Of a DNA stretch of 64,000 nt, positions 15,352 to 56,300 are shown piece after piece. Under the pieces are notes generated by a model that made no database searches, had not been told where the DNA came from, and saw only the letters and a program-made list of their open reading frames with translations. Position 1 is the stretch's first letter; the number at the start of each line of letters is the position of its first letter. This DNA comes from Haliotis rufescens (taxonomy: Eukaryota), in NCBI RefSeq assembly GCF_023055435.1, contig NW_025964383.1, positions 13,888,001-13,952,000 of the forward strand, in the 5' to 3' direction. The position numbers were made by a program, and so were the translations under genes.

Positions 15352-18331
15352 ATGGAGCACACGCGCTGTCCGAACCGTGGACACCGAGCTGTCACAACAA
15401 TATGTATACTGACTTTAGTCATGTCAGCAGCATTGAACATACCCCTGATTGTTCTGCTTGTGCTGAATAAAGTCTCTCGCGGTCACAGCAACACTGCAGT
15501 CACAGAAGAAACAAAACACATTGGGCAAGGATCATTGTGTGTTCTCTGTGAAAGGGATAGGAGAGAGGAGCGTTCCTTGCCACCGTCCAAGGATGTAGAT
15601 GTGGTACATCTTCAGGGACGTCGGATGTGCTGTCTGAGACATGCTGGCGGCTTAACACATCTTGTTCAGCTTGTAAGTAAAGTGACAACTGTATTTAAAG
15701 TCATGTATTAGCAGCGAAATTCTATTTGAATTGATTAAAAGAAAGGTAACGTGTAATATCTTGAAACATGGCAAGTTAAATTGAGTGAGCTGCGTTTACG
15801 CTTCGTTGAGTGAATGAGTGAGTATGGTTTTACGCCGCTTAGTGCAATATTCCAGTAAAATCAGAAACGGGCTTCACTCATTGTGTTCATGTGGGGAATC
15901 GAAGGTGGGTGTTTGGCGTGAGCGAACGCTTTAACCACTAAGCTACGCCACCGCCCCAGTTCCGTTGAACAGTTTTTCAGGTGTAACACGGCGTGTCAGC
16001 TCAATGTGGGAGGAAAGTCCGAAGTGATGCAGGTCTCAGACGTTTGACACTTTGGAGAAATCCACATGCACCGGAATAGGGCTGACAAAACTAGAAACAT
16101 GATGAGAGCAAATCTGGAATTCGAATCAACTGTTGTGAAATACAACAGTTACCGATCTCCAACAACACTATTGCCTGATACACTCTCATCAATTTGATTT
16201 TCTTTGAATATTTCAGTGTTAAAAAGTCCAGAAATTGACCTTCCAATGTCACCATTAATGTCTGAAGATTTATTCTGTGAAAAGCATTATTAGAAGACCA
16301 ACTTGATGCAATTGTTACATGTTTAAGTTGTGAGCTTTGACGATCTAATTTATGAGAGAGGAATTGTATCGGTGTAAAATATTTGATTTTAATCAAATTG
16401 GTCCATGCTCGAAATTGGTCCATCAACATTTAAATGTTCTGATACATGGCGTATTTTAATGAGCATCCGTATTACAGATGTCAGGCTACTACTTTGAGCA
16501 TAGAGGATCCAAAACTGACTCGGGCAGGACACGACACTCTCACCAAAACGATGTCCAGCCTTACACTAGGCCCTCTGCCCACCTGTTCCTCGATCAGGGC
16601 GCATTCAAAGGTACGAATAGGTATAGGCCTGTCCAAAGTGTGAGTGAGTGAATGAGGTTTTACGCCGCTTTTAGCAATATTCCAGCAATATCACGGCGGG
16701 GGACACCAGTAATGGGCTTCACACATTGTACCCATGTCGGGGATCGAACCCGGGTCGTCGGCGTGACGAGCGAACGCTTTAACCACCAGGCTACCCGACC
16801 GCCCTGTCCAAATTGTGTTTTGTGGGAGAATGACAAGAGCTCTATAATGTTATTATGTTATTCTGTTTAAACCATAATGTTCCTCTCTGTTGGATAAATG
16901 TTCGTTTAACACTTGCTGTTAGCACTTTAGAATATCAGAGTACAACTCTGGGTACAATGTGTGAAGCGCATTTCTGGTGTCCCCCGCCCTGATATTGCTG
17001 GAACATTGCTAAAAGCGGCGTAAAAACAAACTCACTCACTCACTCAGGGTACAACTCTTTACCATTAATATAGTGTTCCCAGTTGTATTTACGCCGAAGT
17101 TCGGTAGTGTTTGTTTGTTTACTTGTTTGTTGTTTAACGCCGCATTCAGCAATATTATAGCTATATGATGACGGTCTGTAAATAATCGAGTCTGGACAAT
17201 CCAGTGATTGACACCATGAGCATCAATCTACGCAATTGGGATACGATGACATGTCGACAAGCACGGGTTGCTGAAGACCAATTCTAACTTGGATCTTCAC
17301 GGGTCTGTTCTGCAGTGATTTATCCATGCTTGCGGAAAAGAAATTCACGTATACCAGTTCTTTGTTTACGTTTCTAAGATTGTTTTCTTNNNNNNNNNNN
17401 NNNNNNNNNNNNNNNNNNNNNNNNNNNNNNNNNNNNNNNNNNNNNNNNNNNNNNNNNNNNNNNNNNNNNNNNNNNNNNNNNNNNNNNNNNNNNNNNNNNN
17501 NNNNNNNNNNNNNNNNNNTATCATTTTGCAACTCTGAGTTTCACGCACCCATGTTATTGCGTACGATTATCAGGCATAATGAAACATGGTTTTTAGTATG
17601 ACCCTTTTTTTTGCTCGGCTTGAGGGTTTACCATGGCGACAGGTGGAAATGCCTGATGATCGTACGCAATACCATGGGTGCGTGAAACTCAGAGTTGCAA
17701 AATGATATAAGGAAAGTGTATCCAAATCTGTATTTATGTTCTACTTTGTATTGAGCGCTCTCTTCTGCAATTGGATCATACTTGTGGGTATGTATGTATG
17801 TATGTATGTATGTATGTATGTATGTATTAAACGATAAACCAAAAATATAAAATCGAAAAAGCGGACATTTATTTCAGTAGCTGACATTACCATAATTGCC
17901 ATCATCATTTAAATACTGAATATATTGCAGGAACCCATCTTGTCTGGAGCACAAGGCCTGGTTTTGGAACTGCGCATGTAACTGGTGTCATAGTTATGGA
18001 AAATAACTCAATATTCGTACAAAAAGATGGTTTATATTTCGTATATTCCTCTCTGACGTTTACAGTACGTGATGGTGACATCACAAATGGATACGTGACA
18101 TATTCGTTATTACGCCACAATGCACGTTATTCCCCTGTGTCTGATATTTTACTGATAACAAATGTTACTCTTCCTCACAGAGAGAGACTTTTCACTGCAG
18201 CTACCTTAGAGGAAAACTTTTCCTTGCGGCAAGGAGATGTGCTATCCGTCCACCTATCTAACTATTCATATGTTTATCGGTTTTCTTCATCAAATTATTT
18301 TGGTGTTCGTCAGCTTAGCACGAAACTTTAA
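15352..18331 (+). CDS. TNF-superfamily ligand, copy 1 (type II membrane, 3 exons, ~284 aa)
   Basis: Exons 15352-15672 (TM + Cys stalk, donor gtaagt), 16478-16610 (..RPSAHLFLD, THD strand A), 17931-18331 (LVW..GFGTAH, DGLYFVYSSLTF, LRQGDVLSV, NYFGVRQL). 855 nt, phases 0/1 fit. The start ATG is the most plausible one but unproven. Confidence 0.9.
17390..17518. other. Assembly gap (one of seven)
   Basis: N runs at 17390-17518, 32281-32410, 34554-34721, 46681-46817, 52037-52175, 52252-52386 and 52444-52601. Confidence 0.99.
17519..17708. mobile_element. Inverted-repeat (MITE-like) element next to a gap, TNF copy 1 intron 2
   Basis: ~58-bp near-perfect inverted arms (tatcattttgcaactctgagtttcacgcaccc..) around a ~75-bp spacer. 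Confidence 0.6.
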
Positions 18332-21571: not shown

Positions 21572-24500
21572 ATGTCTTCCTCTGTCTGTGAGAGGCTTCT
21601 CCCGAATGGATTCGACAGTTTTGGAAGAAAGAAAGTCAAGGTATTTACCACATCACACACCGGGGTCTATCAGCCTGTCGTGTGTCCAGACCCAACGAAG
21701 GGGATCGCCAGAAAACAGAACCAGCGGCCATCAACATGCCTTTGTGTCGTTGTCCTTTTGGTATCAGTGGCTATCAACGTTGCTTTAGTGAGTTGGTACA
21801 TGTACATAAGACTGAACGGGAATACGAACGCCGAGGTTCAGTTTGATGCTGATATGTCTAACTCTATATGCGTGAGGTGCGATTCTCTTCACCTCCCGGA
21901 ACCGGACAATTCGCCGTTAATATCAAAGGTCAAGGTCATAGATCTGGGTCAGAAATCCTCGTTGTGTTGCTTGCAGCATTCCGAACATCTACAAACTCTA
22001 CTCAACCTTGTAAGTATAATATATGCTCGCATCTATGTATATACATTAAGCAGAAGAGGTGAAATGGGGTTTAACGTCGCGTCCAAGATTATTGCACTTA
22101 TATAGCGACGTGCATGTACGTGTGTGTGTTTGTGTGGCTGTTTGTACTAGTCTGGACTGATGCCGATTTATAGTGCTAGCTCACTGAGATACCATGCCGC
22201 AGTTTAACATGAATACCCCTTCAGACACATTTTACTGACTCCGGGCCGACCAGTCCTTGTTTTAGCCCCTTATTGCCGAGCGCCAGACAGGGTAACAACT
22301 TGTACCATCTTTTAACGTCTTTTGGTATGACGCGGCCGGGGATCGAACCCCGGACCTTCCGCTCTCCGGGCGGACGCTCTACCACTAAACCACGGAGGTT
22401 ATATGCATAAGACTATATATGTACACAATGATTTCATATGTAGTATATAAAAAATAATCCAGGTGATCCTGGCTTCGTTTAAAACTTCAAGTAACATTCT
22501 CACTGTTATATTGGACGTAAGGACCGATCATTTGATATTCTAGGGAAGACCTGGGATTTTGCGTGGAGGATGGATATTATTTCAGCTGAAAAAAATCTAA
22601 ATATTGTTATCAGTGAGACATCTTGTTGCAACCTTTCCCACCCCACTCCCACCCGAGAATATATATTGGTCGGTCCCTAAGCCCTAAGGGATATATCAAA
22701 CACGAATGTTCCACTTTCGTTTCGACTGAGAAACTTTGTTGGCCTTGTCATACTCAGTATTCTACTTTCGTTTTATTCACAATTAAATACGTACGCGACT
22801 TGTCATTCTGAGTATTCTACATTCGTTTTATTCAATTAAATACGTACGTGACTTGTTATTGCCATTCTCACTATTCTGCTTTCGTTTTATTCAATTAAAT
22901 ACGTACGTGACATGTCATTGTCATACTCAGTATTCTACTTTCGTTTTATTTAATTAAATACGTACGTGACCTGTCATTGTCATACTCAGTATTCTACTTT
23001 CGTTTTATTAAATTAAATACGTACGTGACTTGTCATTGTTATTCTCACTATTCTGCTTTCGTTTTATTCAATTAAATACGTACGTGACTTGTCGTTGTCA
23101 TTCTAAGTATTCTACTTTAGTTTTATTAATTAAATACGTACGTGACTTGTCGTTATCGTTGTCTGTATATAGCTTCTCCTTTGTCTTTGTTTTGTATTTG
23201 TAAATTCTTTCGTGTATGAAATGTAACTGATCGTGATGTCCCCGTATATAACAGGTTGTAGGGGAGTACTATCACTACAGCCAGAGTGCCACGGGGACAG
23301 AAGCTTTCAGTCTCAGACCCAACAATTCTGCCCATCTTTACCTCGACGTACACAGAAATAAAGGTTTGTCATATGACTGGATTCTTGGACACTGTTTGTG
23401 TTGGAGATGAATAAAAGTCATCTCCATCATCATAAGAACTCTATCTCTGCTAAAAGAACACATTTTTTGTGGCATAATACAGTCAGCATGCATAATCTTG
23501 TTATGTTTGTGGTATAATATACAGTCAGTATGCATAATTACGTTATATTTGTCGTGGGATGGTGCAGATATTATTGATTTCCGTCTTCTTATTCTACAGC
23601 GTTATGATTGGTTTGTTTGTTTGTGGTTTAACGCCACATTCAGCAATATTCCAGCTATATGACGACGGTCTGTAAATGATCGAGTGTAGACCAGACAATC
23701 CAGTGATTGATATCATCAGCATCGATCCACGCAATTGGGATACCATGACATGGATAAACCATGTCGGCGAGCCTGACCACCCGATCCCGTTAGCGTTATG
23801 AAGCCATTTAAAATATGGAAATTCAATTACATGACGATATTCACAAAGGGGTTAAAATGACGTCACTATTGTTTCAACCGCAGATTATTTGCAGCGAATT
23901 CGCTGTTAATTGACCTACTTTCAGCTATGTAAGTGTTGGTTCAAATGCAGCACGGGCATCACAGAAAGAAGTTACAGATTCTCGTTCTTTTTTTAAGTTT
24001 TCGGCAAATCCGATTACGCAGTATTTTGTAACTTTAAAGCTGTATTTGAAATCGGCTAACGTAGTCGTTACTGATATTCGTTACAAATAATGATAGTCGC
24101 CTGTCTCGCTGATTTGAACATTATCCCAAACGGCGAGCCTAATGATGTGAGTTTGATTATTTTTGTTTTGTTTAACGCCGCACCCAGCAATATTTCAGCA
24201 ATAGGGCGATCTGTAGATAATCGAGTCTGGACCAGAAAAATCAGATATTAACATTGACCACCCGATCCCGTTGGTAGCCTCTTACGACAAGCATAGTCGC
24301 CTTTTACGGCAAGCATGAAGACCTCTTCTACCCAGGATATTCACTGGTCCATGGTGTACATGTAAGTATCCAATATAACAGAAATGATAACGATATATCA
24401 GAGCCTTTTTTAATCATTTAATTTTTATTTTTTAATATTACAGCAAATCATCGCTTGACGTGGGTTGTGGACACAGGCTTCGGAACGGCGCACACGACTG

Positions 24501-24829
24501 GTGGCGTGAGATATTCAAACGGTACACTGCGGGTACACCAAGATGGCGTCTACTTCCTGTACTCTCACGTGACCATCTCCCCTGACAACATCACAGATGG
24601 CCTTGACATTGTTCACTGTGTACAAAGGTATAATCCCCACTTGCCGCAGACTGGGAACCAGCTCCTTCTCATCAGTAAGATGTCGCTCAACAACCACGAG
24701 AGGAGAACGAGTTTCTTAGCAGCAAATCTCAAATTGCGACGACACGACGAAATATTCGTGGAATTCTCGGATCCATCGCTCGTGTACAACTTCTCACCAG
24801 CCAGCTATTTCGGGCTGCATCGTCTGTAG
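21572..24829 (+). CDS. TNF-superfamily ligand, copy 2 (3 exons, ~310 aa)
   Basis: Exons 21572-22009, 23255-23363 (..NSAHLYLD), 24444-24829 (LTW..GFGTAH, NGTLRVHQDGVYFLYSHVTI, LRRHDEIFV, SYFGLHRL). 933 nt in frame; TATAAATA at 21500. Confidence 0.93.
22518..22680. mobile_element. Short MITE-like element
   Basis: Ends taaggaccgatcatttgatatt / aatatatattggtcggtccctaa are imperfect TIRs; the same right end occurs at ~62675-62698. Confidence 0.5.
22746..23160. repeat. ~59-bp tandem repeat, ~7 copies, TNF copy 2 intron 1
   Basis: gtcatactcagtattctactttcgttttattcaattaaatacgtacgtgacttgtcatt units. Confidence 0.9.
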
Positions 24830-26944: not shown

Positions 26945-27498
26945 AGACAGAATAGTTGGAGAGTCAGACATAGCCCTTGAGAGAAAAGTTGGAGAGTCAG
27001 ACATAGGCCCTGATAGAATAGTAGAGAGTCAGACATAGCCCTTGAGAGAACAGTTGGAGATTAAGACAAAGGCCCAGACAGAATAGTTGAAGTCAGACAT
27101 TGGCCCTGACTGAATAGTTTGAGAGTAAGACATAGGCCCAGACAGAAAAGTAGAGAGTCAGAAATAGCCCTTGAGAGAACAGTTGGAGATTAAGACATAG
27201 GCCCAGACAGAATAGTTGAAGTCAGACATTGGCCCTGACTGAATAGTTAGAGAGTAAGACATAGGCCCAGACAGAAAAGTAGAGAGTCAGAAATAGCCCT
27301 TGAGAGAAAATAGTTGGAGAGTCAGACATAGGCCCAGACAGAATAGTTGAAGTCAGACATTGGCCCTGACTGAATAGTTAGAGAGTCAGACATAGGCCCA
27401 GACAGAATAGTTGAAGTCAGACATTGGCCCTGACTGAATAGTAAGAGGGTCAGACATAGGCCCAGACAGAATAGTTGGAGAGTCAGACACAGGCCCTA
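26945..27498. repeat. ~32-bp tandem repeat with 129-bp (4-mer) higher-order unit
   Basis: gaatagttggagagtcagacataggcccagaca variants; gtagagagtcag recurs at 27021, 27150 and 27279. Confidence 0.9.
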
Positions 27499-27499
27499 A

Positions 27500-28455
27500 C
27501 ACAACCTGCCATCCCCTCATTCTCCACCACCTCCCATCCCCTCATTCCCCAACCCCCTCATAACCGAACACCTCCCACCCCATCAACCCCAACCCCTCAT
27601 CTCCCACCACCTCCCATCCCCTCATTCCCCAACCCCCTCATAACCGAACACCTCCCACCCCATCAACCTCAACCCCTCATCTCCCACCACCTCCCACCCA
27701 TTCAACCCCAACCCCCTCATCACCCACCACCTCCCTGCCCTTCAACCTCAACCCCTCATCTCCCACCACCTCCCATCCACTCATTCTCCACCACATCCCA
27801 CCCCTTCAACCCCAACCCCCTCATCACACACCACCTCCCACCCCTTCAACCTCAACCCCTCATTCTCCACCACCTCCCATCCACTCATTCTCCACCACCT
27901 CCCACCCATTCACCCCCAATCCCCTCATCTCCCACCACCTCCCATCCACTCATTCTCCACCACCTCCCACCCATTCACCCCCAATCCCCTCATCTCCCAC
28001 CACCTCCCATCCACTCATTCTCCACCACCTCCCACCCATTCACCCCCAATCCCCTCATCTCCCACCACCTCCCATCCACTCATTCTCCACCACATCCCAC
28101 CCCATCAACCCCAATCCCCTCATCTCCCACCACCTCCCATCCACTCATTCTCCACCACCTCCCACCCATTCACCCCCAATCCCCTCATCTCCCACCACCT
28201 CCCATCCACTCATTCTCCACCACCTCCCACCCATTCACCCCCAATCCCCTCATCTCCCACCACCTCCCATCCACTCATTCTCCACCACCTCCCACCCATT
28301 CACCCCCAATCCCCTCATCTCCCACCACCTCCCATCCACTCATTCTCCACCACCTCCCACCCATTCACCCCCAATCCCCTCATCACCCACCATCCCCACT
28401 CTCTCATCCCCAACCCCCTCATCACCCACCATCCCCACTCTCTCATCCCCAACCA
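27500..28455. repeat. C-rich, almost G-free tandem repeat (65-bp unit in the core)
   Basis: cacctcccatccactcattctccaccacctcccacccattcacccccaatcccctcatctcccac repeats. Confidence 0.9.
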
Positions 28456-29220
28456 TTTCCCGCCCATCCCGTTCCGAATATTACATGGACGTCAGCTCTC
28501 GATGTAATATCAAAGATACTTACACCTGAAATAAAACAGAAATCTAGATTTAATAACGAAAGTAAAATCAGAAGCGCGATAACAAGATCTGTAAACAAAA
28601 CCATTTCCGAGAAATCTTAACGCACACAGAACCATTACCTCATGACTATCAGTGCTGTGGCCCCACGACGCTCATAACAGTATTGATAATTCAACATATA
28701 TATCGTCAGCTTTAGCCCGTAGTACTTCAGTGGGAGAACAGTACGTTCTCCGTGTGAATGCATGTTTGGTCATGTGACCTCTGCATGGCCACCCTGCATT
28801 GTGTGACTTCCTTTTTTTGGTGTTACGGTAATGTGTGTCTCTGAATACCCGTCAGAAGGATTACACGACGAATTGAAAAAGGAAAGTAGCTCGTCCAAGA
28901 AATGCAAATTCTAAGTAACAGAGACGTCTCTATATTTGATAACAGCATATAACGAACCGTACATAGTCAATGCCTCTGATAGACTAGCCACTGTATTCAA
29001 AACATATGGCATACTGCGTACCGACTTTCACTCTATCGGTACACAATGCTAAACCAGGCCTCAAGGAGGACTTCTAGCAAGTAAGCGCGTTTCTATTTAA
29101 AAGAAGGGGGTTGCCCAGGTATTTGAAAATCCCGATTGACCAGGAAGTCTTGTCAACAATCAGGTAGAATAATCTGTACGAACACGCGATCGGCCAGTTC
29201 ACAGCGCATCTACATCCAAC

Positions 29221-32200
29221 ATGTCGGAATCGACAGGGTTCATTACAACCAACAGAGCTGATGTGCCCCTGTTTGGACCTGTGTGTGTCCGTGTCAGTGT
29301 GGTGGGATCCCTTCTTGTCAATGTAGCTGTTGTGACATTGGTGATCTTCTTCGTAGTGCTACAACATGATACAGATACGCCCCTACCCAATCCTGACACA
29401 GGCTCTGTGTGTTTTGTTTGCGATTATCTGGGTTCCGGGATCGAATCCCATGACACACTCTTCAGACTGGCCAAGGGAGGTAACCACACGTTTTGCTGCC
29501 TTAAAGAAAAGGATGAACTTACTCCTGCATTTGAACAGGTGTGTGTTTCTAGTTTGAATCGTATCCTATGTTTTTAGTTGGGTGATTGACTTGCCTTTGC
29601 ATATGTTTGTGACGCTCATATTTTCGAGGACACCTGGTATCACCATTTGATAATTATTAAACACATGCTCATGATATATTCGGAATCGTACATTCGAGTC
29701 TGCTTTTAACGGAGTTTTCTCTTATGAGCACTGAAAGAGTTTTGTCGTTTATATTTACAAAAGTTCACTGAATTTTTTAATTTTAAGAGTGTAAAGCGGA
29801 ATATATTATTGTATGTGTTCAAAACATGTTCCTACTGTATGGCGTCATAACATTTTGCAAATATTTACATCTCTGCTATCGATGCTCATGATGTCAATCA
29901 CTGGATTGTCTGGTTCAGACTCGATTATTTTACAGACCCCCGTCATATAGCTTGAATATTGCTGAGTGCGGCGTTAAAGAACAAACAAACAAACAAACAA
30001 ACATCTCTGCTGCACGGATGCATTTATCGCAACCCTGTTTATCGTGTTTATCAGTGTTGTATCTGTGCTTCGTGTTACAAGAAGGAAGTGATATCATGCG
30101 ATAGTAGTTGACATACGACACGACATAGATAAGTTATACACAACATCAACATGTCAGTTAATTATCTCACCTGACGTCAACGTCCGTAATCATATAGACG
30201 ACAGATACCTTTAACTTACTTAATTTTTAACTATTATGATTCTCAGGTGATTCTCTTTGCGCGTTAGCCGAGAATCTCTGCACTTGTACGCAGCAGGAGT
30301 TGAACGTTACCATATCGTTCTAAGTTTTCACCAAAGTGCATAACTTCGGGCGTTGCTCCCACAGGAAGCCCTGACTTGATACAACTGACATACTGTTCAA
30401 AGCGGCGGTTTTGTTTGTTTGTTGTTTAACGCCGCACTCAGCAATATTTCAGCTATATGACGGCGGTCTGAAAGTAATCGAGTCTGGAACAGACAATTCA
30501 GTGATTGATGTCATGAGCATCGATCCACGCAATTGGGATACGATGACATGCATCAACCAAGTCAGCGAGCCTGACAACCCAATCCTGTTAGTCGCCTCTT
30601 ACGACAAGCATAGTCACCATTTATGGCAAGTATGGGTTGCTGAAGACCCATTCTAGCCCGGATCTATACGGGTAGACAAGCATGGGTTTTTGAAGACCTA
30701 TTCTAACCCGGATCTTCACGGGTCTCAAAGCGGCGGTAAACCAATAAATAAAAAGGTAACGCCAGAGAACAAAAAGTCTCGATTAAATGGAAACTGCCGT
30801 GCGTTTAACGATCATGAATGTTTTAATAGTTTAGTGTCACAACTCACAACTATTATGAGGAGCTTTCGGGTAGTCTAGTGGTTAAAGCGTTCGCTCGTCA
30901 CGCCGAAGACCCGGGTTCGATTCCCGACATGGGTACAGAGCGTAAAGCCCATTTCTGGTGTCCCCCGCCGTGATATTGCTGGATTATTGCTAAAAGCGGC
31001 GTAAAACCATACTCACTTACTCACAACTACTATGACTATTTGTGTTTATGTAACAGATTAAACGATTTTACCAACAAAAGATCACACGCATTGTAGCAAC
31101 ATCGGAGGTACTATTAGAAATAATAATTTGTTTACCAATGTATTTTTATAAGATAAGTGTATTAAGTCATTTCTATATGTCTGCAACATAAGCCAGATTG
31201 TTAATATTGTTTTCGCAGATGGCTAAAGCTATATATAAAGGAAAAGGTATGTAAAAATAAATACTCACGCCAATATAAAATTATTAATTATTTTCTATAT
31301 GATATAGCAAGAATTTTTTTATTATCTCTTACAAAATTATTTAATGATCTTGTGAACCAGACCATGATTCACGGCGTATAAAAATAAATTCAGATTAATA
31401 TTTGTAAAAATAATTCACGAACTTTGTTGTCAGAAGACATATTTGAGAAAAACTATCCCACGATTATTCTTCCTGGTCTAAAGGACAAAATCATGTTTGA
31501 AGGTGACTATGGTTCTCACTATCTGTCTACCCGTAAAGATCCGGGGTAGAATAGGTCTTCAGCAACCCATGCTTGCCGTAAAAGGTGACTATGCTTGTCG
31601 TAAGAGGAGACTAACGGGATCGGGTGGTCAGGCTCGCTGACTTTGTTGATGCATGTCATCGTATCCCAATTGCGTGGATCGATGCTCATGATGTCAATCC
31701 CTGTGTTGTCTGGCCCAGAATCGACTTTTTACAGATTGCCGTCATATAACTGGAATATTGCTGAGTGCGGCGTTAAACAACAAACAAACAAACAACCAAA
31801 CAAACAAAACTACCTGTCTGTTACAGCGGATGCTCCTCTCACTCCCAGTGTCGCCGCCCCGTGGATGAGGGGTGCCACTGGAGCACTTCTGTATCTGGAC
31901 CCGGCAGCAATAAATGGTTTGTTTCTATGGTTACCATACCTGTTTCTTCTCATTAGCGATGCATTACGAGGGTATTAATCACCAGACGGAAAACAAACAT
32001 AATAGGTTTTGTATGCAACTCAACTGACGGGGAAAGAAAGTATTTACCCAAGTTTGGCGGTGGCTAAAATAAAAACAAAAACAAGAAATGGTTATTCGAT
32101 GGTGATATATTTGATGCGGGTACCATAGTTATGTTTTGGACCTTACGTTTGCTGTGTTGTTTCGGCGACTGTTTTCAGACTATTAACGCTGTGATAACGT

Positions 32201-33766
32201 TTGTAATTGTTTGGTCAACTCCATTTTTCAACTGTATACTTTCATTTGCCCATCAGTTTATAAAAAAAGCAAAAAAAACCNNNNNNNNNNNNNNNNNNNN
32301 NNNNNNNNNNNNNNNNNNNNNNNNNNNNNNNNNNNNNNNNNNNNNNNNNNNNNNNNNNNNNNNNNNNNNNNNNNNNNNNNNNNNNNNNNNNNNNNNNNNN
32401 NNNNNNNNNNTTTGAATGTTACAACGCATTCATAGGTCCCGGTAACAAATTACCGTTGCTGAGCAGGTTGAGTCATGATTTTCTACCAAAGAGACACCCA
32501 TGACGTACGGCTTTGGTATTGAAGTATTCTTTAAATAGAATCCATTCATAAAACTATGTTATTTCTTCAGATATTATTTGATACACACACGTGGCTATAA
32601 ATAGTACTCCTTCTTCCCGGCGTCGGTGTCTTCGTGACCACGATCGTACCTGACGCTTCCTTGTTCAACACTGAATGATCCTTGTTGGTACCGTTTCATT
32701 GTGTCATGAAAAATTCCAAGTACTACGTACACTACTCAATGTAATGTTCCGGGAATGGTAAAACCAGGAAGTCTTGTAGATACAGTAAACGGGTATGGTT
32801 GCGGAATGGTTGCATTCAGAAATGGGTGAGTATGGTTTTACGCCGCTTTTAGCAATATTCCAGCAATATCACGGCGGGGGACACCAGAAATGGGCTTCAC
32901 ACATTGTACCCATGTCGGGAATCGAACCCGGGTCTTCGGCGTGACGAGCGAACGCTTTAACCACAAGGTTACCCGACCGCCCCGCATTCAGAAATGACGT
33001 TTGAAATCGGTACTGTCAGGATCCTTGCGGGGAGGATGTGATCACGTTTCTGATGCGATAGGTATGTTTGGAGCGTTCGGGGGAAATATGAACACATTTA
33101 GATAAAAATCGCCAGAAAATAATCAGATTCGATTATCTGCCGAAACAAATTCTATTGGGCGTAAAAGGCAAAATAGTGAAAGTATTTTTTTAAAATTAAA
33201 AACAAATGGCCCTAAAATCTTCCGTAGATATCTTGACAGCATCTGTGGTGTTCTTTTATGTCAGAACATGGTCGCTTATTTCTGGTCGCTAAATGGCTGA
33301 AACATTGTCGATGCAACTTTAATGCTTAACTCACTCTTTAATAAAAATTAATTTTGAGACATTTCATATTTTCGTTTCAGGCTCCACGCTGACCTGGAAT
33401 GACCGAGGACGGAACAACTTCGCCTTCATGTCTGGCGTTGAGTATCGAGATCGCAAAATACACATACCGTCGAATGGTCGATATCACGTATATTCCCACG
33501 TGACTTACAAGCAGAATAAGGACACATATGGTTGCAAGACGTTCTTGCATCAGATTACCCGTGAACACCCGAGACAGCCGAAGTTAGGGGAGGTCACTCT
33601 TCTGGTTACCAAGAATAGCTACTCGACACATGAGATATATCAATCCAGCTTCCTGTCAGCCATCTTGGTCATGCGCAAAAATGACCGAATCGCCGTCAAT
33701 GTTTCTGATGTCTTATCAGTTCACAAACAGTCCTCGCTTACATTTTTCGGTGTAAGGAAACTTTAG
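29221..33766 (+). CDS. TNF-superfamily ligand, copy 3 (4 exons incl. 28-nt micro-exon, ~273 aa)
   Basis: Exons 29221-29538, 31219-31246 (MAKAIYKGK), 31827-31916 (..GALLYLD), 33381-33766 (LTW, GRYHVYSHVTY, SSFLSAILVMRKNDRIAVNVS, TFFGVRKL). 822 nt, phases 0/1/1 fit. An N-gap lies in intron 3. Confidence 0.88.
31529..31808 (+). mobile_element. Short retroposon family B (~280 bp, non-tRNA structured head, (AAAC)n tail), in TNF copy 3 intron 2
   Basis: acccgtgaagatccggggtagaataggtcttcagc..gtcgtaagaggcgactaacggg..gagtgcggcgttaaac(aaac)n; TSD actatctgtct/actacctgtct. Other copies: ~10877-11146(+), 12823-13000(+), 13686-14168(-, split), 17108-17305(-), 18996-19255(+), 20327-20592(+), 23608-23793(-), 24160-24350(-), 29877-30003(+), 30408-30724(-), 43367-43581(+), 44290-44537(-), 50052-50238(-), 51341-51611(+), 53938-54186(+), 55523-55694(+), 58430-58695(-), 61370-61638(-), 63643-63891(-). 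Confidence 0.9.
32825..32983 (-). mobile_element. SINE family A copy
   Basis: Full consensus match, flanked by 13-bp TSD gcattcagaaatg. Confidence 0.9.
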
Positions 33767-40200: not shown

Positions 40201-42300
40201 TACCAACAGGACAACACAACCTTCCTTCACTACCCACACGACAACACAACCTCCCGTCACTACCAACAGGACAACACAACCTCACGTCACTGCCCACAGG
40301 ACAACACAACCTCCCGTCACTACCCACAGGAGAACAAAACCTCCCGTCACAACCCACAGGACAACACAACCTCCCGTCGCTACCCACAGAACAACACGAC
40401 CTCCCGACCCTGCCCACATGGCAACACAACCTCCCGTCACAACCCACAGGGCAACACAACCTCCCGTCACTACCCACGGGACAACACAACCTCCCGTCAC
40501 TACCCACGGGACAACACAACCTCCCGTCACTACCCACCAGACAACACAACCTCCCGTCACAACCCACAAGACAACACAACCTCCCGTCACTACCCACAGG
40601 ACGACACAACCTCCCGTCACTACCCACAGGACAACACAACCTTCCTTCACTACCCACACGACAACACAACCTCCCGTCACTACCCACAGGACAACACAAC
40701 ATTACGTCACTGCCCACAGGACAACACAACCTCCCGTCACTACCCACAGGACAACAAAACCTCCCGTCACAACCCACAGGACAACATAACCTCCCGTCGC
40801 TACCCACAGAACAACACGACCTCCCGTCACTGCCAACATGGCAACACAACCTCCCGTCACTACCCACAGGGCAACACAACACCCCGGCAATGCCCACAGG
40901 GCAACACAACCTCCCGTCACTACCCACCAGACAACACAACCTCCCGTCACTACCCACAGGACAACACAACATTACGTCACTGCCCACAGGACAACACAAC
41001 CTCCCGTCACTACCCACAGGACAACACAACCTTCCTTCACTACCAACACGACAACACAACCTCCCGTCACTACCCATAGGGCAACACAACCTCCCGTCAC
41101 TACCCACGGGACAACACAACCTCCCGTCACTACCCACGGGACAACACAACCTCCCGTCACTACCCACCAGACAACACAACCTCCCGTCACAACCCACAAG
41201 ACAACACAACCTCCCGTCACTACCCACAGGACGACACAACCTCCCGTCACTACCCACAGGACAACACAACCTTCCTTCACTACCCACACGACAACACAAC
41301 CTCCCGTCACTACCCACAGGACAACACAACATTACGTCACTGCCCACAGGACAACACAACCTCCCGTCACTACCCACAGGACAACAAAACCTCCCGTCAC
41401 AACCCACAGGACAACATAACCTCCCGTCGCTACCCACAGAACAACACGACCTCCCGTCACTGCCCACATGGCAACACAACCTCCCGTCACTACCCACAGG
41501 GCAACACAACACCCCGGCAATGCCCACAGGGCAACACAACCTCCCGTCACTACCCACCAGACAACACAACCTCCCGTCACTACCCACAGGACAACACAAC
41601 ATTACGTCACTGCCCACAGGACAACACAACCTCCCGTCACTACCCACAGGACAACACAACCTTCCTTCACTACCAACACGACAACACAACCTCCCGTCAC
41701 TACCCATAGGGCAACACAACCTCCCGTCACTACCCACGGGACAACACAACATCCCGTCACTACCCACGGGACAACACAACCTACCGTCACAACCCACAAG
41801 ACAACACAACCTCCCGTCACTACCCACCAGACAACACAACCTTCCCTCACTACCCACAGGACAACACAACATTACGTCACTGCCCACAGGACAACACAAC
41901 CTCCCGTCACTACCCACAGGACAACACAACCTTCCTTCACTACCCACACGACAACACAACCTCCCGTCACTACCCACAGCGCAACACAACATCGCGGCAC
42001 TGCCCACAGGGCAACACAACCTCCCGTCACTACCCACCAGACAACATAACATCACGGCACTGCCCAGAGGACAACATAACCTCTCGTCACTACCCACAGG
42101 ACAACACAACCTCCCGTCACCACCCACAGGACAACACAACCACCCGTCACTACCCACAGGACAACACAACCTCACGTCACCACCCCCAGGACAACACAAC
42201 CTCCCGTCACTACCCACAGGACAACACAACCACCCGTCACTACCCACAGGACAACACAACCTCCCGTCACCACCCACAGGACAACACAACCTCCCGTCAC
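37284..42300. repeat. 30-bp minisatellite, ~167 units, with higher-order structure
   Basis: Consensus tacccacaggacaacacaacctcccgtcac; rare variants recur at 630-bp spacing (40601/41231, 40881/41511). Confidence 0.97.
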
Positions 42301-42751
42301 GTTACTTCCTATTCACATGCCACATTATCATGGGTCTACCCAAATACCCGTCACGACTCACAGGGGTGGCTACCCAGTCATCTGTCACTTCCCACGGGCC
42401 TACCCGTGATGTAAAGTTTTATTTAGTCGTGAGATAATATTACTATGAACCATTATTAAAATAGGTTTGGAAAAAAACATAATTAACCAATCAGGAAGTA
42501 ACCACACGGCCCCAGTCTATTTCTGTTCGCGACAGTGTTGCAAGCCGCGTGTTGGTCACGCAGCATGATTGTCACCAGGCACCAGGAAGTACACTTAGTA
42601 GAAAACAATCACTATAATCATTATAATGAAAGTCCAAAGATTTCAAGAGAGAATATATTATATCCGTGTATGTCCTTGTTCTATTTGTTGTGCATATCAT
42701 TGACAGACATTTTGGCAAGTTGTGCTTATTATTTCTAGCTTGATATCCTTC

Positions 42752-45600: not shown

Positions 45601-46296
45601 ATGATGGCAGAACCTGACTCCACCTTCATATCCACTGACACAGCAACGTCACCGCCTCCACCTTCCCAACAACGACGACGTCGTACCAATGTGTTGTTCT
45701 ATGCCGTTGTCGCCATTTCTCTGACTGCCAATGTTATCCTCGTTGTGGTAGTGACTTTCCACATGTTAATAAAACAACGTGGACATCACCACAAAAGTGA
45801 GGGTTTATCCTCCATGTCGAATCACCAGCTTGGGTTTGCTGATCCACTATGTCTCACCTGTGATCAATTGGGTCCGCTGGTCGAATCCCAGGATACGATC
45901 TATGACGTCATACGATTGCCGTTGGGACATACGCTGTGTTGTCAGAAACAGAGGAATGACGTCACAAAGTTATTCCATAAGGTAATTAGACGCTAGCATT
46001 ATACACATGACATTCTATTTTACTTATTTACCATTTTATGTTGATGAAAATATTATCATGATCAGTTGCGATACCCATATATATCAAGAGAGTGACAGAT
46101 TTTTTAATGTGTTAAATTGGGACAGGATACGCTCATATTTTCGCGAACACACGGTATCCTCAGTATCCATTCATTAACACATGCTTATTATTATACTACT
46201 CAGAATCGTACTATGGGCCCCGCTCTAAGGAGGGATTTCTTATGATTATGGTGAGGTAAAACGTCGCGTCAAAGGTTATTGCACTTATACGGCGAC

Positions 46297-47166: not shown

Positions 47167-49250
47167 AGGAATGTTGTGGAATTTGTATTCGTTTTGCCAG
47201 ACGTGTCGTTTGTGACGTGGAGCATTGCGGGTTTTCTCAACACTTGTCAGTACTTATAGAATTACATCCGTGCTGCTGCGATCGATTACTATATCGTGGA
47301 GGGTTGTGTGTCAGGCTAGGTGGCCTGGTTGATTGCGTGTCATCGTACCCCGACGACGTGGATAGTTGCTCACACTACCAATCACTGGCTTGTATTACAC
47401 ACACCGCCGTCATATAGGTGAAATATTGCTGAGTGCGGCGTTAAGCAACAAACAAACAAATAGTGTTCGCGGTCGGGTAGCGCTTTCATTTAAGGAACCG
47501 CAATTTTATCATTAACTGAGATGCGTCTCTTCCTATGGCAGGATTTGATCGCGGGTTCGAATCCAGATAGTGACCCTTAACAAGGTCGAACATCATAACT
47601 GTTTCCGACTTGAGGCGTTGTGTGGATTTCTCATATTCAGCTGACGCTCTGTGATATCACTTCCCGTGGCCTTTCTGTCAGTATAGACAACAGGCTAGAA
47701 CGCCAGCTTCTCTTTGAATGGTACAAATTGTAGGAGCTTTGAAAACACACAGTCATTTGATTTCTTCACGTGTCTCATTCTTGTTTCAGATAATAGGTGA
47801 TGAATACTACAGACGGTCTACAGGTACGCCAATGATTTATTTATTTATTATTCATGATATTCAGTTAAGATCCTTCATGTTGTATGTAACCTAAACCCAC
47901 GGTGTTTCCATAATCAGTTCTTCTTCCAAATTCAGCTACAACGTATTTGCACCAAATCAAATTACCTTCTTTGATAATGTAAACACACACAGCAATGCAT
48001 TTTCCTTCTGATTTAATTATTTGACCTGACCGTGGTCAAGTGGGAGAGCGTCTGCTCGGAGAACTTTTTACGAAAAGACGTTAAAAGATGGTACTTGTTG
48101 TTACCCTGTCTGGCGTTCGACATTAAGGGGCTAAAACAAGGACTGGTCGGCTCGGAATCAGTATACTGTGGGGTATTCATGTTAAACCGCGGCAAGGTAT
48201 CTCAGTGTGCTAGCACTATAAATCGGCATCAGTCCGGACTACAGTGTAGTACAAGTAGCCACACACACGCACGCACGCACGCACGCACGCTCGCACGCAC
48301 GTCGCTCTATAGTTGCAATAATCTTGGACGCGACGTTAAACCCCATTTCATCTCACCATTATTTAACCTACTCGTGTTAATCTCTCTCTTGTATGCAATT
48401 GTTGTTACTGTTAATCCCCCACCTTCTATATATATCCTGTATCATGTTAAGTAATTAGCCTTGCTCGACAACGGTATAATGATCTGTACCGACACGTCGC
48501 CTCTACAGTAAGGAAATAACCATAAATTGTATCTAATTTCCCACTTCAGGTAGGGAGCCAGTTGGCCTCACCAGGGGGATGAATGAGCAGATATGGAGTC
48601 GTCCCAGGGAGTCGACGTGGGCTCATCGGTACATGGTGCCACACACAGGTAATGTACGACATTAAGAGTGTAGATAATGTTTTACGCCGCAGATAACAAA
48701 TTCCGTCGTTCATCCCAGTGGTTAATATTTTTTTCTATGTGATAATTTCAAATTCTCACAGTCACATATGCCCTTAAATATAACAAACAGTTCTTGTAAT
48801 GATGCATCAGTATATAATTTTTGCTTTGTTATTAATTCATAACGTGTTATGTGTACAGATTCGCCGCCAGCATGGACAACGAGCGATCCCTACAACACGT
48901 CATTCTGTTCAAACGTCGAATGTAACGGAACAGACATTGTTGTCTCAGCAGGGGGTCTCTACCTCGTGTACTCACACATCACATTCATCACGTCACCAGC
49001 TCCTTCAGACACCCCCTTCCTGCACATGATACAGCGACAGAACCCCAATCTCCCTGGTCTGGGTGTGAAACCAATACTCTTATCTAAAACGTCATTCAGA
49101 TGGACAGTAGCTCCGCAGCAAACGTCCTTTCTGTCCGCCATTGTGAAGCTCCGCAGACAAGATCGCCTCCATGTGAAAATGTCGGAAAATTATTATGATT
49201 TAGTTGAAAAAAGGATGCTTTCAAATTTTTTTGGTGTTATGAAAGTGTAA
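45601..49250 (+). CDS. TNF-superfamily ligand, copy 4 (4 exons incl. 34-nt micro-exon, ~301 aa)
   Basis: Exons 45601-45981, 47790-47823 (IIGDEYYRRST), 48550-48648 (..WAHRYM), 48859-49250 (GGLYLVYSHITF, TSFLSAIVKLRRQDRLHV, NFFGVMKV). 906 nt, phases 0/1/1 fit. Confidence 0.88.
46818..47166. repeat. (AGT)n microsatellite
   Basis: Imperfect trinucleotide run after an N-gap, in TNF copy 4 intron 1. Confidence 0.95.
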
Positions 49251-52175: not shown

Positions 52176-52636
52176 TACGTAGGAAGGAAGGAAGGAAGGA
52201 AGGAAGGTAGGTGTGTAGGTAGGTAGGTAGGTGTGTAGCTGGATGGGTAAGNNNNNNNNNNNNNNNNNNNNNNNNNNNNNNNNNNNNNNNNNNNNNNNNN
52301 NNNNNNNNNNNNNNNNNNNNNNNNNNNNNNNNNNNNNNNNNNNNNNNNNNNNNNNNNNNNNNNNNNNNNNNNNNNNNNNNNNNNNNGTGGGTAGGTGAGT
52401 AGGTGGGTGGGTAGGTGGGTAGGTGGATAGGTGGGTGGGTAGGNNNNNNNNNNNNNNNNNNNNNNNNNNNNNNNNNNNNNNNNNNNNNNNNNNNNNNNNN
52501 NNNNNNNNNNNNNNNNNNNNNNNNNNNNNNNNNNNNNNNNNNNNNNNNNNNNNNNNNNNNNNNNNNNNNNNNNNNNNNNNNNNNNNNNNNNNNNNNNNNN
52601 NGGAGGGCGGGTGGGTGGGTGGGTGGGTGGGTTGGT
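52176..52636. repeat. (GGAA)/(GGTA)/(GGGT)n tetranucleotide region broken by gaps
   Basis: Visible runs between three N blocks. Confidence 0.85.
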
Positions 52637-53192
52637 AGGCGATCGCTTTCTGCTCAAATGAGCCTTTTCGTACTATTAATAACGGGAGGGGGGGGGGGGG
52701 GGGGCGATCGGGTAGCCTAATAGGTACAATGTGTTGAGGCCCATTTCTGGTGTCCCCCGCAGTGATATTGCTGGAAAATGGCTAAAAGCGGCGTAAAACC
52801 ATACTCACTCACTCATTTTATTAACAGACAATGTTATATATCGGTCCAGGATGCTTTGTGTCCGAAATAGAAGGAATCCGGATCAAGGGGGTGCCCTGTG
52901 TGTACATCGTGACATCGTTGCTTCGGTAAACACGACACGTCACTTCCTGGTTGGTAAGCAGATTGTGGCACTATCAGATGTGTCGCCAGAGATCACACGC
53001 GATCGATCCTTACTTTGAATGACAGAATGCCGCGATGTGGAGAAACTGATCTCGATTAAATGAATAAATAGGGAAATGGAGTGTGAATAAATATAACAAA
53101 CACATATACAAATAACATTACAAATACCTAAGTAATAGAACATTTAAATCAGTAAATAGCGATATGTCTTTCCTTGATATCATATCTTGCCA

Positions 53193-53203
53193 GGGGATTC
53201 CCC
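53193..53203. promoter_or_regulatory. Palindromic NF-kB site upstream of TNF copy 5
   Basis: GGGGATTCCCC matches the kB consensus GGGRNWYYCC on both strands; a second kB-like site (GGGATTTCTC, minus strand) lies at 53316-53325. Confidence 0.55.
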
Positions 53204-53341
53204 TTGTATTCCCACGTTGTGCAACTGTGGTTGGTTGCCAGGTAACCGTGAATCCGGTTTTAAGCCAATCCGGGTTCAGCTTTTATTCCCGCTTTAAACA
53301 TGATTACTGAGAAATGAGAAATCCCGCTTGTTTAGGTAAGC

Positions 53342-56300
53342 ATGGTTTGGTTAACTCAAAACTCATCTCTCAAAAATAACCTCCTAAAGACAAAAGTACA
53401 TCTGATGGACGGTACTGATCATTACAATGACCCGACATATTTACATGTTAGTCATATCAACAAAGATCGCGCCGATCAAAAAATGAAGAAAAAACGACCA
53501 AGGAACAAAGAGAAAAGCAACAAAAAAGAAAAACAATGTGGATTGAAAAAACAACGTTTGGGCGTGGTCGTCCTGTTGTTGTCTATGTGTGTTAACATCA
53601 TACTCGGGATTGTATTGGTGCTGTCGATACCGATATATGGAATGTCTCATAAGTCCATCCTGGAAGTCTTGGACGTTTCAGAAGATCTCAGCACGTGTGT
53701 TTGCGTCTTGTGTTCAAGTCTTGGTATCAATGCCGAGGATGGGGCGATGAATGGACGGAAGGATGTCATTGTCATCAACATGTCACAACACTCCTTCTGT
53801 TGTCTCAGGAACACTGGCTATTTGCAAACACTAATTACAGTGGTAAGTACAACAACAGCATCAAAATGTTTACTTTTAAGCATAAACAATCTTATACTTG
53901 TTGATTACACCTTAACAATGGGATTCACGTTTAAGATACCCGAGAAGATCTGGGGAAGAATAGGTCTTCAGCAACCCATGCTTGCCGTAAAAGGTGACTA
54001 TGCCTGTCGTAAAAGGCGACTTATGGGATCGGGTGGTCAGGGTCGCTTACTTGGTTGATGCATGTCATCGATCCCAATTGCGTAGATCGATGCTCATGAT
54101 GTCAATCACTGGATTGTCTGGTCCAGACTCGATTATTTACAGTCCGCCGTCATATAGCTAAATATTGCAGAGTACGTTAAACAACACATATGAAGTTTAT
54201 GTTTGTAGATAAATAAACGCGACAACACCCTTTTTTATTATCATAAGAAATCTCTGCTAAAAGCAGTGTTCATTGTATGATGATATAACTTATGATTCCT
54301 AAGATAGTATTTTAAAATGTCAATGTGTCATGTGAACATATTTTTCAACACATATGCGTTACAAATAACGACAATGTGGACTGATTATAAACGAACACAA
54401 ATTCACATCCTCCACCTGTCGATCACGTGTCTCATAATTCAACAGCGTCTAAATAAAAGATTGGCTAGACATATTTCAATTCAAAGGCACTTGAAAAGAC
54501 GCAAACAATAGAAGGACTGGTATTTAACTCAGTAAAAGTGATATTAAGAAATTAAAGGAGGTATTTATAATTCTACATTTCTAAGAATGCACTGGCTTGT
54601 TTGTCCATCTTCAAGTATCCTGGGCCGATCTGTTTACATCAACAAAGAAACTCCCATCTTCCTTTGTGAAAGCTGAGCCGATGTGCAGCTGCCATAGCGT
54701 GTTATCGTTACATCGCTTCAGCGTCCACGAAAACTCGCTGTGTCTCATTATAGACCTTCATAGTGAGTGAGTGAGTGAGTGAGTATGGCTTTACGCCGCT
54801 TTTAGCAATATTGCAGCAATATCACGGCGGGGACACCAGAAATGGGCTTCACACATTGCACCCATATCGGGAATCGAACCTAGGTCTTCGGCGTTACGAG
54901 CGAACGCTTTAACCACTGGGCTACCCGACCGACCCTTAATGTTAATAGAACCTTGCGTGTTTTTTTTATATTCAATGAAATTTTCTTTCATCTTTTTAAT
55001 GTCATGCCGAACAAATTTCCCCAAAGCGGTCGATTAAATCATATACGTCCGCCTGTACTTTAATCCCTGCATACATCCGCATGTTTATCATCCATCCATC
55101 TTCCATCCATTATATCTACCATCCATCACATCTTCCAGCAACATATATCCATAATCTATCATTTATACTTTTTCATCCATCATCCACGTCTCTTAACTAT
55201 CATCTGTCCGACATTTCATATTTTATCCATCATCCATCATCCATCCGTAATCAAGCCGCCCTTCAACCCATCCATCATCCATCGTCAGTATATCCATCAT
55301 CTATCCATCATGCCAGACGCCATCTATCTTCGGGCACAAGGGTGGCCCAGCCGTCTTAGGCGCCTCAATTCGCTGTGCAGAGTTTCGTCCCTTTGGTATC
55401 GTGGATTCGGTTCGCCCGGATTGAATTTATTTTCGTAGGTTTGTCAACAACATGCCCGTGATCGTTGGTTTCTCAAAAGTTTGAAACGTCTCAGACATGC
55501 ATCCTTTCCCTCCCACATTAAGAGGCGACTAACGAGATCGAGTGGTCAGGCCTAGGCTCGCTGACTTGGTTGATGCATGTCATCGATCCCATTTGCGTGG
55601 ATCGATGCTCATGATATTAATCATTGGATTGTCTGGTCCAGACTCTATTATTTACAGACCGCCGTCATATAGCGTTAAACAAGAAAGAAACCAACCCACA
55701 TCAAGCTGACACACCGCGATACAACTGGAATACTGTTCAAAGCGGCGTTAAACCCAACTCACGCACTCATCTATCATCATGCATTATCCATCAGCCGTCT
55801 GACAGCCCATCCATCTATATTAATATCAGATCAAGTCGGAAAAAAGTTCAATGCGCATGACCATGTATGTGCAAATATTACCCATCATACGTATATGTAT
55901 TTAAATGTATGTTTGTCCATTAATGATATCCGCGTCCTTCCTTACTTCAGTGTCACATGTGTGTAGTTTTCAGCTCAGTTCGGGGACCATGAAGATATGG
56001 CAAGGAATGACACCAAACCGGTGTTAACAGTCCCGCAGCAAATCAAACATGGCGCTCACTTATTTCTGGATAGAAGTTATCTGAAAGGTAATTCTTAATA
56101 CACTTACATGATCACTAAACAATAAAGTAAATAAATGTCGAATGATTTCTTAATGTCTTCAAAGACTCCGAATAAAATTTTGACCGCAGTAGAGCCTGCA
56201 AGTACTTCTCATTCAATCTGAACTAAATTCACTAATATCAAGTTTATAACCATATCTTAATAATTAAAGTTAATATTTGTGAAGACGTTTACAGTAAAAC

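What the first reader, a model, noticed from the sequence alone, without database searches (positions are those of the whole stretch)
15535..53842. Invariant C-x2-C-x(24-28)-C-C-x13 stalk module in all five ligands: a candidate undescribed disulfide or metal-binding domain
Seen: LCVLC..MCCLR, ICVRC..LCCLQ, VCFVC..FCCLK, LCLTC..LCCQK and VCVLC..FCCLR, with spacers of 26, 28, 24, 25 and 28 residues. In every copy exactly 13 residues (amphipathic, e.g. HLQTLLNL, YLQTLITV) separate CC from the phase-0 intron. Established: classical vertebrate TNF and FasL stalks lack such a four-Cys module. Inference: a small folded extracellular domain (two disulfides, inter-chain links or Zn site) plus a helix, possibly controlling trimer or higher-order assembly or shedding. 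I cannot tell whether a database already names it.
Basis: partly seen in the sequence, partly recalled or inferred. Interest (0 to 1): 0.82.

Follow-up and report, generated by a model that had tools for sequence, protein, structure and literature searches.

The report
Four-cysteine stalk domain in mollusc TNFs
Five neighbouring TNF-family cytokine genes of the red abalone, and dozens more in abalones and bivalves, carry a small conserved four-cysteine domain plus a helix between the membrane anchor and the receptor-binding head, a stretch usually treated as a floppy linker and not named by any database I could search.

Summary
The window is Haliotis rufescens DNA holding five type II TNF-superfamily ligand genes. 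Each exon 1 encodes a cytoplasmic tail, a transmembrane helix, then C-x2-C-x(24-28)-CC and exactly 13 more residues before a phase-0 GT donor. No assembly gap touches a module or a recognised exon.

The motif is not chance: 5 hits with a donor against 0.01 in shuffles. The four Cys are invariant among 19 full-length abalone and bivalve proteins that share about 25-30% identity. The module is an island of conservation (0.29) between two poorly conserved linkers (0.12 and 0.13).

About 36 module exons occur in this genome, against at least 82 TNF-domain matches. One well-supported clade of paralogues has short Cys-free stalks.

Pfam, PDB sequences, Foldseek, VIA-align, the ESM Atlas and the open literature give no name or fold match.

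AlphaFold2 gives a moderate-confidence small three-stranded sheet carrying the Cys, followed by a long amphipathic helix.

My best reading is an undescribed disulfide-stabilised neck domain of molluscan TNF ligands. Intra-chain bonds, inter-chain bonds and zinc cannot be told apart here. It is a new variant of a known kind, of moderate interest. The scan had noted the gene array before, but not this module.

The parts
15352..15672 (+). Gene A exon 1: cytoplasmic tail, TM helix, stalk module (module 15538-15672; C-x2-C-x26-CC-x13, donor GTAAGT)
   Evidence: orthologue P0019
16478..16610 (+). Gene A exon 2 (phase 0 to phase 1): continues the helix (..GYYF..) and carries the first TNF-domain strand (..SAHLFLD..)
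17931..18331 (+). Gene A last exon: TNF homology domain and stop
   Evidence: Pfam PF00229 E 1.5e-13; acceptor
21572..22009 (+). Gene B exon 1 (module 21869-22009; spacer 28, donor GTAAGT)
   Evidence: orthologue P0007
23255..23363 (+). Gene B exon 2 (VVGEYY.. then ..SAHLYLD..)
24444..24829 (+). Gene B last exon: TNF homology domain and stop
   Evidence: PF00229 E 9e-15
29221..29538 (+). Gene C exon 1 (module 29410-29538; spacer 24, donor GTGTGT; NHT sequon just before CC)
   Evidence: orthologue P0008
31219..31246 (+). Gene C short exon 2 (28 nt). The model lacks an ..AHL.. strand exon; a gap (32281-32410) lies in the following intron and was not filled
33381..33766 (+). Gene C last exon: TNF homology domain and stop
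   Evidence: PF00229 E 4e-18
45604..45981 (+). Gene D exon 1 (module 45850-45981; spacer 25, donor GTAATT)
   Evidence: orthologue P0004
47790..47823 (+). Gene D exon 2 (IIGDEYYRR..)
48550..48648 (+). Gene D exon 3 (carries ..WAHRYMV.. strand)
48859..49250 (+). Gene D last exon: TNF homology domain and stop
   Evidence: PF00229 E 7e-12
53342..53842 (+). Gene E exon 1 (NCBI model P0001, LOC124125202; module 53702-53842; spacer 28, donor GTAAGT; NMS sequon inside the module)
55967..56087 (+). Gene E exon 2 (FSAQF.. then ..GAHLFLD..)
56322..56719 (+). Gene E last exon: TNF homology domain and stop
   Evidence: PF00229 E 2.5e-15

Best explanation
The motif is the core of a small folded extracellular 'neck' domain of about 50-60 residues. 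It belongs to a large and old group of molluscan TNF-superfamily ligands.

The layout, from the membrane outwards, is:
- TM helix with a conserved Ser-x3-Asn
- a variable linker of 16-32 residues
- strand 1 carrying Cys1, then a tight turn or short helix starting at Cys2
- a variable loop, strand 2, and strand 3 carrying the vicinal Cys3-Cys4
- an amphipathic helix that runs across the phase-0 intron into exon 2 (two hydrophobic residues, Gly or Ser, then an acidic and aromatic stretch)
- a second variable linker of about 20-25 residues
- the TNF homology domain

I infer that the four Cys form two disulfides within each chain, tying strand 1 and its turn to strand 3. The resulting rigid domain and its helix would hold the three receptor-binding heads in register above the membrane. 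That leaves the two flanking linkers as the only exposed, cleavable parts of the stalk.

Shown here: the anatomy, the conservation, the distribution and the absence of a named family. Inferred: the disulfide pattern and the role in presenting or stabilising the membrane-bound trimer.
For: - Four Cys are invariant in 5 window copies, in 15 divergent copies of this genome, and in 19 full-length proteins from four Haliotis species and three bivalves (Sinanodonta, Potamilus, Mya). In that alignment the only other invariant columns are the start Met and six TNF-domain residues.
- Mean pairwise identity by region: module 0.29 (0.23 without the Cys), flanking linkers 0.12 and 0.13, TNF domain 0.34.
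- Three proteins (P0009, P0015, P0025) have no other Cys anywhere in the ectodomain, so the four must be satisfied among themselves. The two unionid proteins carry two extra stalk Cys together, which keeps the count even.
- AlphaFold2 gives the same strand / short helix / strand / strand / helix order for the module alone (pLDDT 67, core block 81) and inside full-length P0001 (module blocks 57-73, helix 159-181).
- Type II topology and N-glycosylation sequons in two modules place it outside the cell.
- All intact-looking copies examined keep all four Cys. Copies that lack one look broken: L006, L013-16 and L048 (stop, frame break or truncation) and L010 (first Cys replaced by Tyr).
- Published context: TNF-ligand stalks are the site of shedding, and the TRAIL stalk is said to fix the head for signalling (PMC7905041, PMC6521207).
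Against: - Model confidence is only moderate, the alignments are shallow (12 and 19 rows), and no coordinates were available, so Cys-Cys distances were not measured.
- Vicinal CC and CxxC are also classic inter-chain knots of trimeric proteins.
- No experimental datum exists for any member.
- One abalone clade does without the module, so it is not essential for a TNF ligand as such.
- The profile search of 1.84 billion representatives found only 19 proteins and missed the Mya member. The distribution outside molluscs is therefore unknown.
Confidence: 0.5

Rival explanations
1. Inter-chain staple. The CxxC and the CC of the three chains of a ligand trimer form rings of inter-chain disulfides at the two ends of a short segment, next to a three-helix neck. 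This would make the membrane-bound trimer covalent, or link trimers into higher oligomers.
For: - CC and CxxC next to a trimerising element is the pattern of known inter-chain knots (collagen III C-terminal CC knot, thrombospondin/COMP CxxC ring; from my own knowledge).
- In the related C1q/TNF-related proteins, N-terminal Cys link trimers into oligomers (PMC9952994).
- The helix after CC has an i, i+3, i+4, i+7 hydrophobic pattern.
- A conserved Asn in the TM helix suggests that the anchor also self-associates.
Against: - AlphaFold2 folds the single chain into a compact sheet that brings the Cys-bearing strands together.
- The 24-29 residue segment between the Cys pairs is variable in length and not helical.
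Confidence: 0.25
2. Metal site. The four Cys bind one zinc ion per chain, or shared between chains, as a small zinc-knuckle-like fold.
For: Four invariant Cys with a CxxC pair is a common zinc signature. One TNF ligand, TRAIL, does use a Cys-bound zinc in its trimer core (PMC6521207).
Against: - The domain is extracellular, in an oxidising setting.
- The second pair is CC, not CxxC.
- One paralogue has C-x3-C (L049).
- The unionid proteins add Cys in pairs.
- No zinc-finger family matches the module. The only zinc-finger proteins pulled in by the profile were unrelated RanBP2-type repeats.
Confidence: 0.08
3. There is no autonomous domain. The Cys serve only transiently, for example for oxidative folding or ER quality control, or bond to another protein such as a receptor or co-factor.
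For: Model confidence is moderate only. The fold searches find nothing.
Against: - Non-Cys positions, the secondary-structure pattern and the exon boundary are conserved around the Cys.
- The Cys count in the stalk stays even and self-sufficient in every stalk examined.
Confidence: 0.1

Closest known systems
Vertebrate TNF-superfamily ligands FasL (TNFSF6), TL1A (TNFSF15), LIGHT (TNFSF14), TRAIL and TNF
   Same: The C-terminal TNF homology domain matches. The profile of 19 module-bearing proteins hits these solved chains at E 4e-24 to 1e-15. Type II topology and a stalk between anchor and head are shared.
   Different: All matches start at the TNF domain. None covers the module. From my own knowledge, TNF and FasL stalks have no such Cys module.
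Published abalone ligands AbTNF-alpha and abalone FasL (Haliotis discus discus, De Zoysa et al. 2009)
   Same: Same genus and same superfamily. They were described as a TM region plus a TNF domain, as cited in PMC12367993 and PMC10585096.
   Different: The papers I could read mention no stalk cysteines or stalk domain. The original 2009 papers are not in the library. I could not check whether those two proteins carry the module.
N-terminal cysteines of C1q/TNF-related proteins (adiponectin, CTRPs)
   Same: Cys placed N-terminal to a trimeric jelly-roll head control the assembly state (PMC9952994).
   Different: Those proteins are secreted, have a collagen stalk, one or two Cys and a C1q head. 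There is no sequence relation to the module.
Stalks of vertebrate CD40L, RANKL and TRAIL (recalled from memory, not tested)
   Same: As I recall them, each has two stalk Cys, and the second is directly followed by an amphipathic helix. This resembles Cys3/4 plus the helix here.
   Different: They have two Cys rather than four. No tool here could compare them, so homology is only a lead.
Zinc ribbons and zinc knuckles (CxxC...CxxC)
   Same: They have a CxxC pair and four Cys in about 35 residues.
   Different: The second pair here is CC, the location is extracellular, and no Pfam zinc-finger model matches.

Membership tests
TNF superfamily ligand (Pfam PF00229) | TNF homology domain above the Pfam gathering score | tested here: met
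   All five last exons score 45.9-66 bits against a cut-off of 23. P0001, P0017 and P0029 also match.
TNF superfamily ligand (Pfam PF00229) | Type II membrane topology: one N-proximal TM helix, no signal peptide, basic N-terminal flank | tested here: met
   A 21-residue hydrophobic stretch (Kyte-Doolittle mean 2.4-2.9). The N flank is more basic than the C flank in all five genes.
TNF superfamily ligand (Pfam PF00229) | Conserved strand motifs of the head (AH at strand A, G-x-Y-x-x-Y-S, C-terminal F/Y-G) | tested here: met
   These are invariant or nearly invariant columns of A5, and they align to FasL. The gene C model lacks the strand A exon.
TNF superfamily ligand (Pfam PF00229) | Homotrimer that binds a TNFR-type receptor | not testable with these tools
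   No biochemical data are available.
Zinc ribbon / zinc knuckle | Two CxxC (or CxxH) knuckles and a match to a zinc-finger family model | tested here: not met
   The second pair is CC. No Pfam match at E<=1 beyond noise. No PDB sequence match.
Inter-chain cystine knot of trimeric stalks (collagen III CC, COMP/thrombospondin CxxC) | Cys pair placed directly at the end of a trimeric coiled coil or triple helix, forming inter-chain bonds | tested here: inconclusive
   CC is followed by a predicted long amphipathic helix. Inter-chain bonding cannot be read from sequence.
Any named protein domain covering the module | Significant match of the module in Pfam, PDB sequences or solved folds | tested here: not met
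   - Pfam: none.
- PDB profile: best E 0.52.
- Foldseek: best E 0.77.
- VIA-align: best Z 2.7.
- ESM Atlas: no usable hit.
- InterPro as a whole could not be searched.

The most novel reading that the evidence does not exclude
The module is an ancestral structured stalk domain of TNF-superfamily ligands that predates the split of protostomes and deuterostomes. On this reading the two stalk cysteines followed by an amphipathic helix in vertebrate CD40L, RANKL and TRAIL are its reduced remnant, and stalks such as those of TNF, FasL, Eiger and one abalone clade are secondary losses. The 'stalk' of TNF ligands would then be a degenerate domain with a conserved job in presenting the membrane-bound trimer, not a mere linker.
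Probability: 0.15. Interest if true: 0.75.

Novelty: new variant of a known kind. Interest (0 to 1): 0.5.

Why it matters
TNF-ligand stalks are generally treated as unstructured tethers whose main interest is where proteases cut them. Here, a discrete cysteine-stabilised domain has been kept in the stalk since before gastropods and bivalves diverged. It is present in roughly half of a TNF-ligand repertoire of 70 or more genes in one animal.

This suggests that the geometry or covalent state of the membrane-bound ligand matters for signalling in molluscs. It offers a simple handle (four Cys) for testing that. It also gives a sequence marker that splits molluscan TNF ligands into module-bearing and module-less groups, which helps in annotating these large and poorly named gene families in aquaculture species.

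Tried and rejected
- **Trimer prediction.** Three copies of P0001 residues 112-195 returned 'no answer' (score 0.00, partner poorly folded). This is no evidence either way.
- **ESM Atlas.** The module of P0001 and the stalk of P0029 gave no usable hit.
- **Fold searches.** Foldseek against PDB (best E 0.77) and VIA-align against 48,161 chains (best Z 2.7) found no meaningful fold match. The model is small and of moderate confidence, so this does not show a new fold.
- **Word-based protein searches.** They found only near relatives: gene E itself, a second unionid, and ten proteins from the full-length profile including Mya. These blanks say little.
- **False positives.** Two profile hits, P0012 and P0018, are not relatives. 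P0012 is RanBP2-type zinc-finger repeats and P0018 an unrelated repeat protein.
- **Two-exon gene model.** Rejected, because all five last exons begin after a phase-1 intron.
- I used the database models returned by the searches and searched the window exon by exon. Nothing was done to fill the N gaps.
- **Literature.** Searches of the open library found no description of stalk cysteines in invertebrate TNF ligands.
Full report
**What is in the window.** A six-frame scan finds C-x2-C-x(20-32)-CC-x13 seven times. Five hits are on the + strand at 15538-15672, 21869-22009, 29410-29538, 45850-45981 and 53702-53842. The other two are an intronic open frame and the antisense of a mucin-like repeat.

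In each of the five hits the open frame starts upstream with a Met, a basic stretch and a hydrophobic segment of about 21 residues. It ends, exactly 13 codons after CC, at a GT donor. With the donor required, the pattern occurs 5 times, against a mean of 0.01 in 100 block shuffles.

Downstream of each exon 1 lies an open frame that matches Pfam TNF (PF00229) at E 7e-12 to 4e-18. The exon 1 products match no Pfam family.

**Organism and gene models.** The stalk of the fifth gene retrieves an identical NCBI protein, uncharacterized LOC124125202 of Haliotis rufescens (P0001, 339 aa). Its model has three exons: 53342-53842, 55967-56087 and 56322-56719.

All five TNF-domain exons begin after a phase-1 intron, so the genes are not two-exon genes. 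Comparison with orthologous proteins places the middle exons as follows:
- Gene A: 16478-16610
- Gene B: 23255-23363
- Gene C: 31219-31246
- Gene D: 47790-47823 and 48550-48648

Apart from gene C, the exon just before the last one carries the first strand of the TNF domain (..AHL..). In every gene, the exon that follows exon 1 begins with a short conserved stretch that continues the helix started after CC.

Contigs of two public runs from two studies lie on gene E in exactly this spliced form. The runs' kind is only guessed to be RNA, but a spliced form is what they hold.

The assembly gaps all fall in introns or between genes, and none is within about 700 bases of a module. I did not fill them and did not join exons. 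Gene C's model lacks a strand A exon and has a gap in the following intron, so that model stays open.

**How conserved it is.** The five exon 1 products share 19-30% identity, and the four Cys are invariant.

A profile of the five modules finds 23 exon 1s of the same build elsewhere in this genome. A broader profile that includes three very divergent copies finds about 36. The genome has at least 82 TNF-domain matches.

Nearly all copies have CC, then 13 residues, then GT. One subfamily has 12 residues (L020 and its H. asinina orthologue P0015). One paralogue has C-x3-C (L049). Copies that have lost a Cys look damaged:
- L006 has a stop.
- L010 has the first Cys replaced by Tyr, in an otherwise near-identical duplicate.
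- L013-16 have a frame break after CC.
- L048 is truncated.

A profile search of 1.84 billion protein representatives returns only 19 proteins. They are TNF-like proteins of four Haliotis species, a unionid bivalve (Sinanodonta woodiana), three unnamed records and two false positives. Further searches add Potamilus streckersoni and a Mya arenaria 'TNFL6-like' protein with C-x2-C-x29-CC. The profile had missed the Mya protein, so the known range is a lower bound.

In an alignment of 19 full-length proteins, the only invariant columns are the start Met, the four Cys and six TNF-domain residues. Mean pairwise identity by region is 0.29 for the module (0.23 without the Cys), 0.12 and 0.13 for the linkers on either side, and 0.34 for the TNF domain. 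The module is thus an island of constraint inside the stalk.

**Who lacks it.** Exon 1s upstream of TNF domains in three other clusters encode short Cys-free stalks (L034-L037). The clusters are C556 at 36.3-36.6 Mb, C605 at about 10 Mb and C168 at 6.7 Mb.

In a tree of TNF domains these genes form one well-supported clade (98/94). Module-bearing genes, including the bivalve ones, are spread over the rest of the tree. Deep nodes are weak and the root is arbitrary. Even so, a single loss of an older module is the simpler reading.

**What it may look like.** AlphaFold2 on the module alone (12-row alignment) gives mean pLDDT 67, with 81 in the core block. The predicted order is:
- strand 7-10, containing Cys1
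- short helix 11-14, starting at Cys2
- strand 29-33
- strand 38-42, containing the CC
- helix 46-52

In full-length P0001 (19-row alignment) the same elements reappear at 120-123, 124-127, 142-146 and 151-155. A long helix at 159-181 crosses the exon boundary. Low-confidence linkers lie on both sides. No coordinates were available, so I could not measure Cys-Cys distances.

Three proteins have no other ectodomain Cys at all, so the four must satisfy each other. The unionid proteins add two stalk Cys together, which keeps the count even. Two modules contain N-glycosylation sequons, and the charge distribution fits an N-in, C-out orientation.

**Interpretation.** I commit to a disulfide-stabilised neck domain with two intra-chain bonds, followed by an amphipathic helix. 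It would stiffen the stalk and set the position of the heads, and it would confine accessible, cleavable sequence to the flanking linkers.

The main rival is inter-chain stapling of the trimer, or of several trimers. CC and CxxC are classic trimer knots, the helix has a coiled-coil-like pattern, and related C1q/TNF proteins use N-terminal Cys for oligomer assembly (PMC9952994). A zinc site is less likely outside the cell, with a CC pair and a C-x3-C variant.

The stalk is known to matter in vertebrate ligands for shedding and for fixing the head (PMC7905041 and PMC6521207). A structured stalk element is therefore plausible as a functional part.

**Comparison with what is known.** The heads are ordinary TNF homology domains. 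Their closest solved relatives are FasL, TL1A, LIGHT, TRAIL and TNF, and every match starts at the head.

The module has no match in Pfam, in PDB sequences (best E 0.52), in solved folds or in the ESM Atlas. The open literature on molluscan TNF ligands that I could read does not mention it.

From memory only: vertebrate CD40L, RANKL and TRAIL have two stalk Cys, the second followed by an amphipathic helix. This is a lead for a deeper origin, not evidence.

**Verdict.** The interpretation as a folded Cys-based stalk domain is supported in outline, but its chemistry and function are untested. It is a new variant of a known kind: TNF ligands with an undescribed stalk domain. Its interest is moderate. 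The scan had already noted this gene array and other TNF arrays in the genome, but not the module.

Noticed in passing
window 15352-15672, 21572-22009, 29221-29538, 45604-45981, 53342-53842 (TM segments); also L034-L037: The TM helix carries a conserved Ser-x3-Asn (S81 and N85 of P0001, nearly invariant in 19 proteins). The Asn is also present in the module-less paralogues (..LLNIVVG..). A polar Asn in a single-pass helix suggests that the anchors self-associate.
   Followed up: partly
window 37247-42434 (+ frames): About 5 kb of a mucin-like tandem repeat with 10-residue units (PPVTTH-x-TTQ), open in all three + frames. It has strong C over G skew and lies between TNF genes C and D.
   Followed up: no
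window 27475-28617: A proline-rich repeat (..HLPPPPxHS..) open in several + frames, just upstream of gene C.
   Followed up: no
window 7705-11928 (+): Exons of a flavin-monooxygenase-like gene lie upstream of the TNF array. The scan noted this separately as s1-810563.
   Followed up: no
window 53885-54235, 54704-54937, 55523-55873 (intron 1 of gene E) and many other places: A SINE-like repeat family whose copies translate to a recurrent ..[14 protein letters not shown].. string. These stretches collect enormous summed contig depth in the public runs (1e5 and more), so the family is very abundant or highly transcribed.
   Followed up: no
L006, L010, L013-L016, L048 (contigs C168 and C580 of the same genome): Near-identical duplicated TNF-ligand exon 1s with single defects: a stop before the module, the first Cys replaced by Tyr, a frame break right after CC, or a truncation that loses CC. 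They are probably young pseudogenes or haplotype duplicates inside large segmental duplications on C168 (3.5-5.0 Mb).
   Followed up: partly
window 31219-31246 and 32281-32410: Gene C and its orthologue model P0008 have only a 28-nt middle exon and no ..AHL.. strand A. An assembly gap lies in the next intron, so the gene model may be incomplete.
   Followed up: partly
L049 (G000:C605:6822034-6822880): A divergent paralogue has C-x3-C instead of C-x2-C, while keeping CC, 13 residues and a GT donor.
   Followed up: partly
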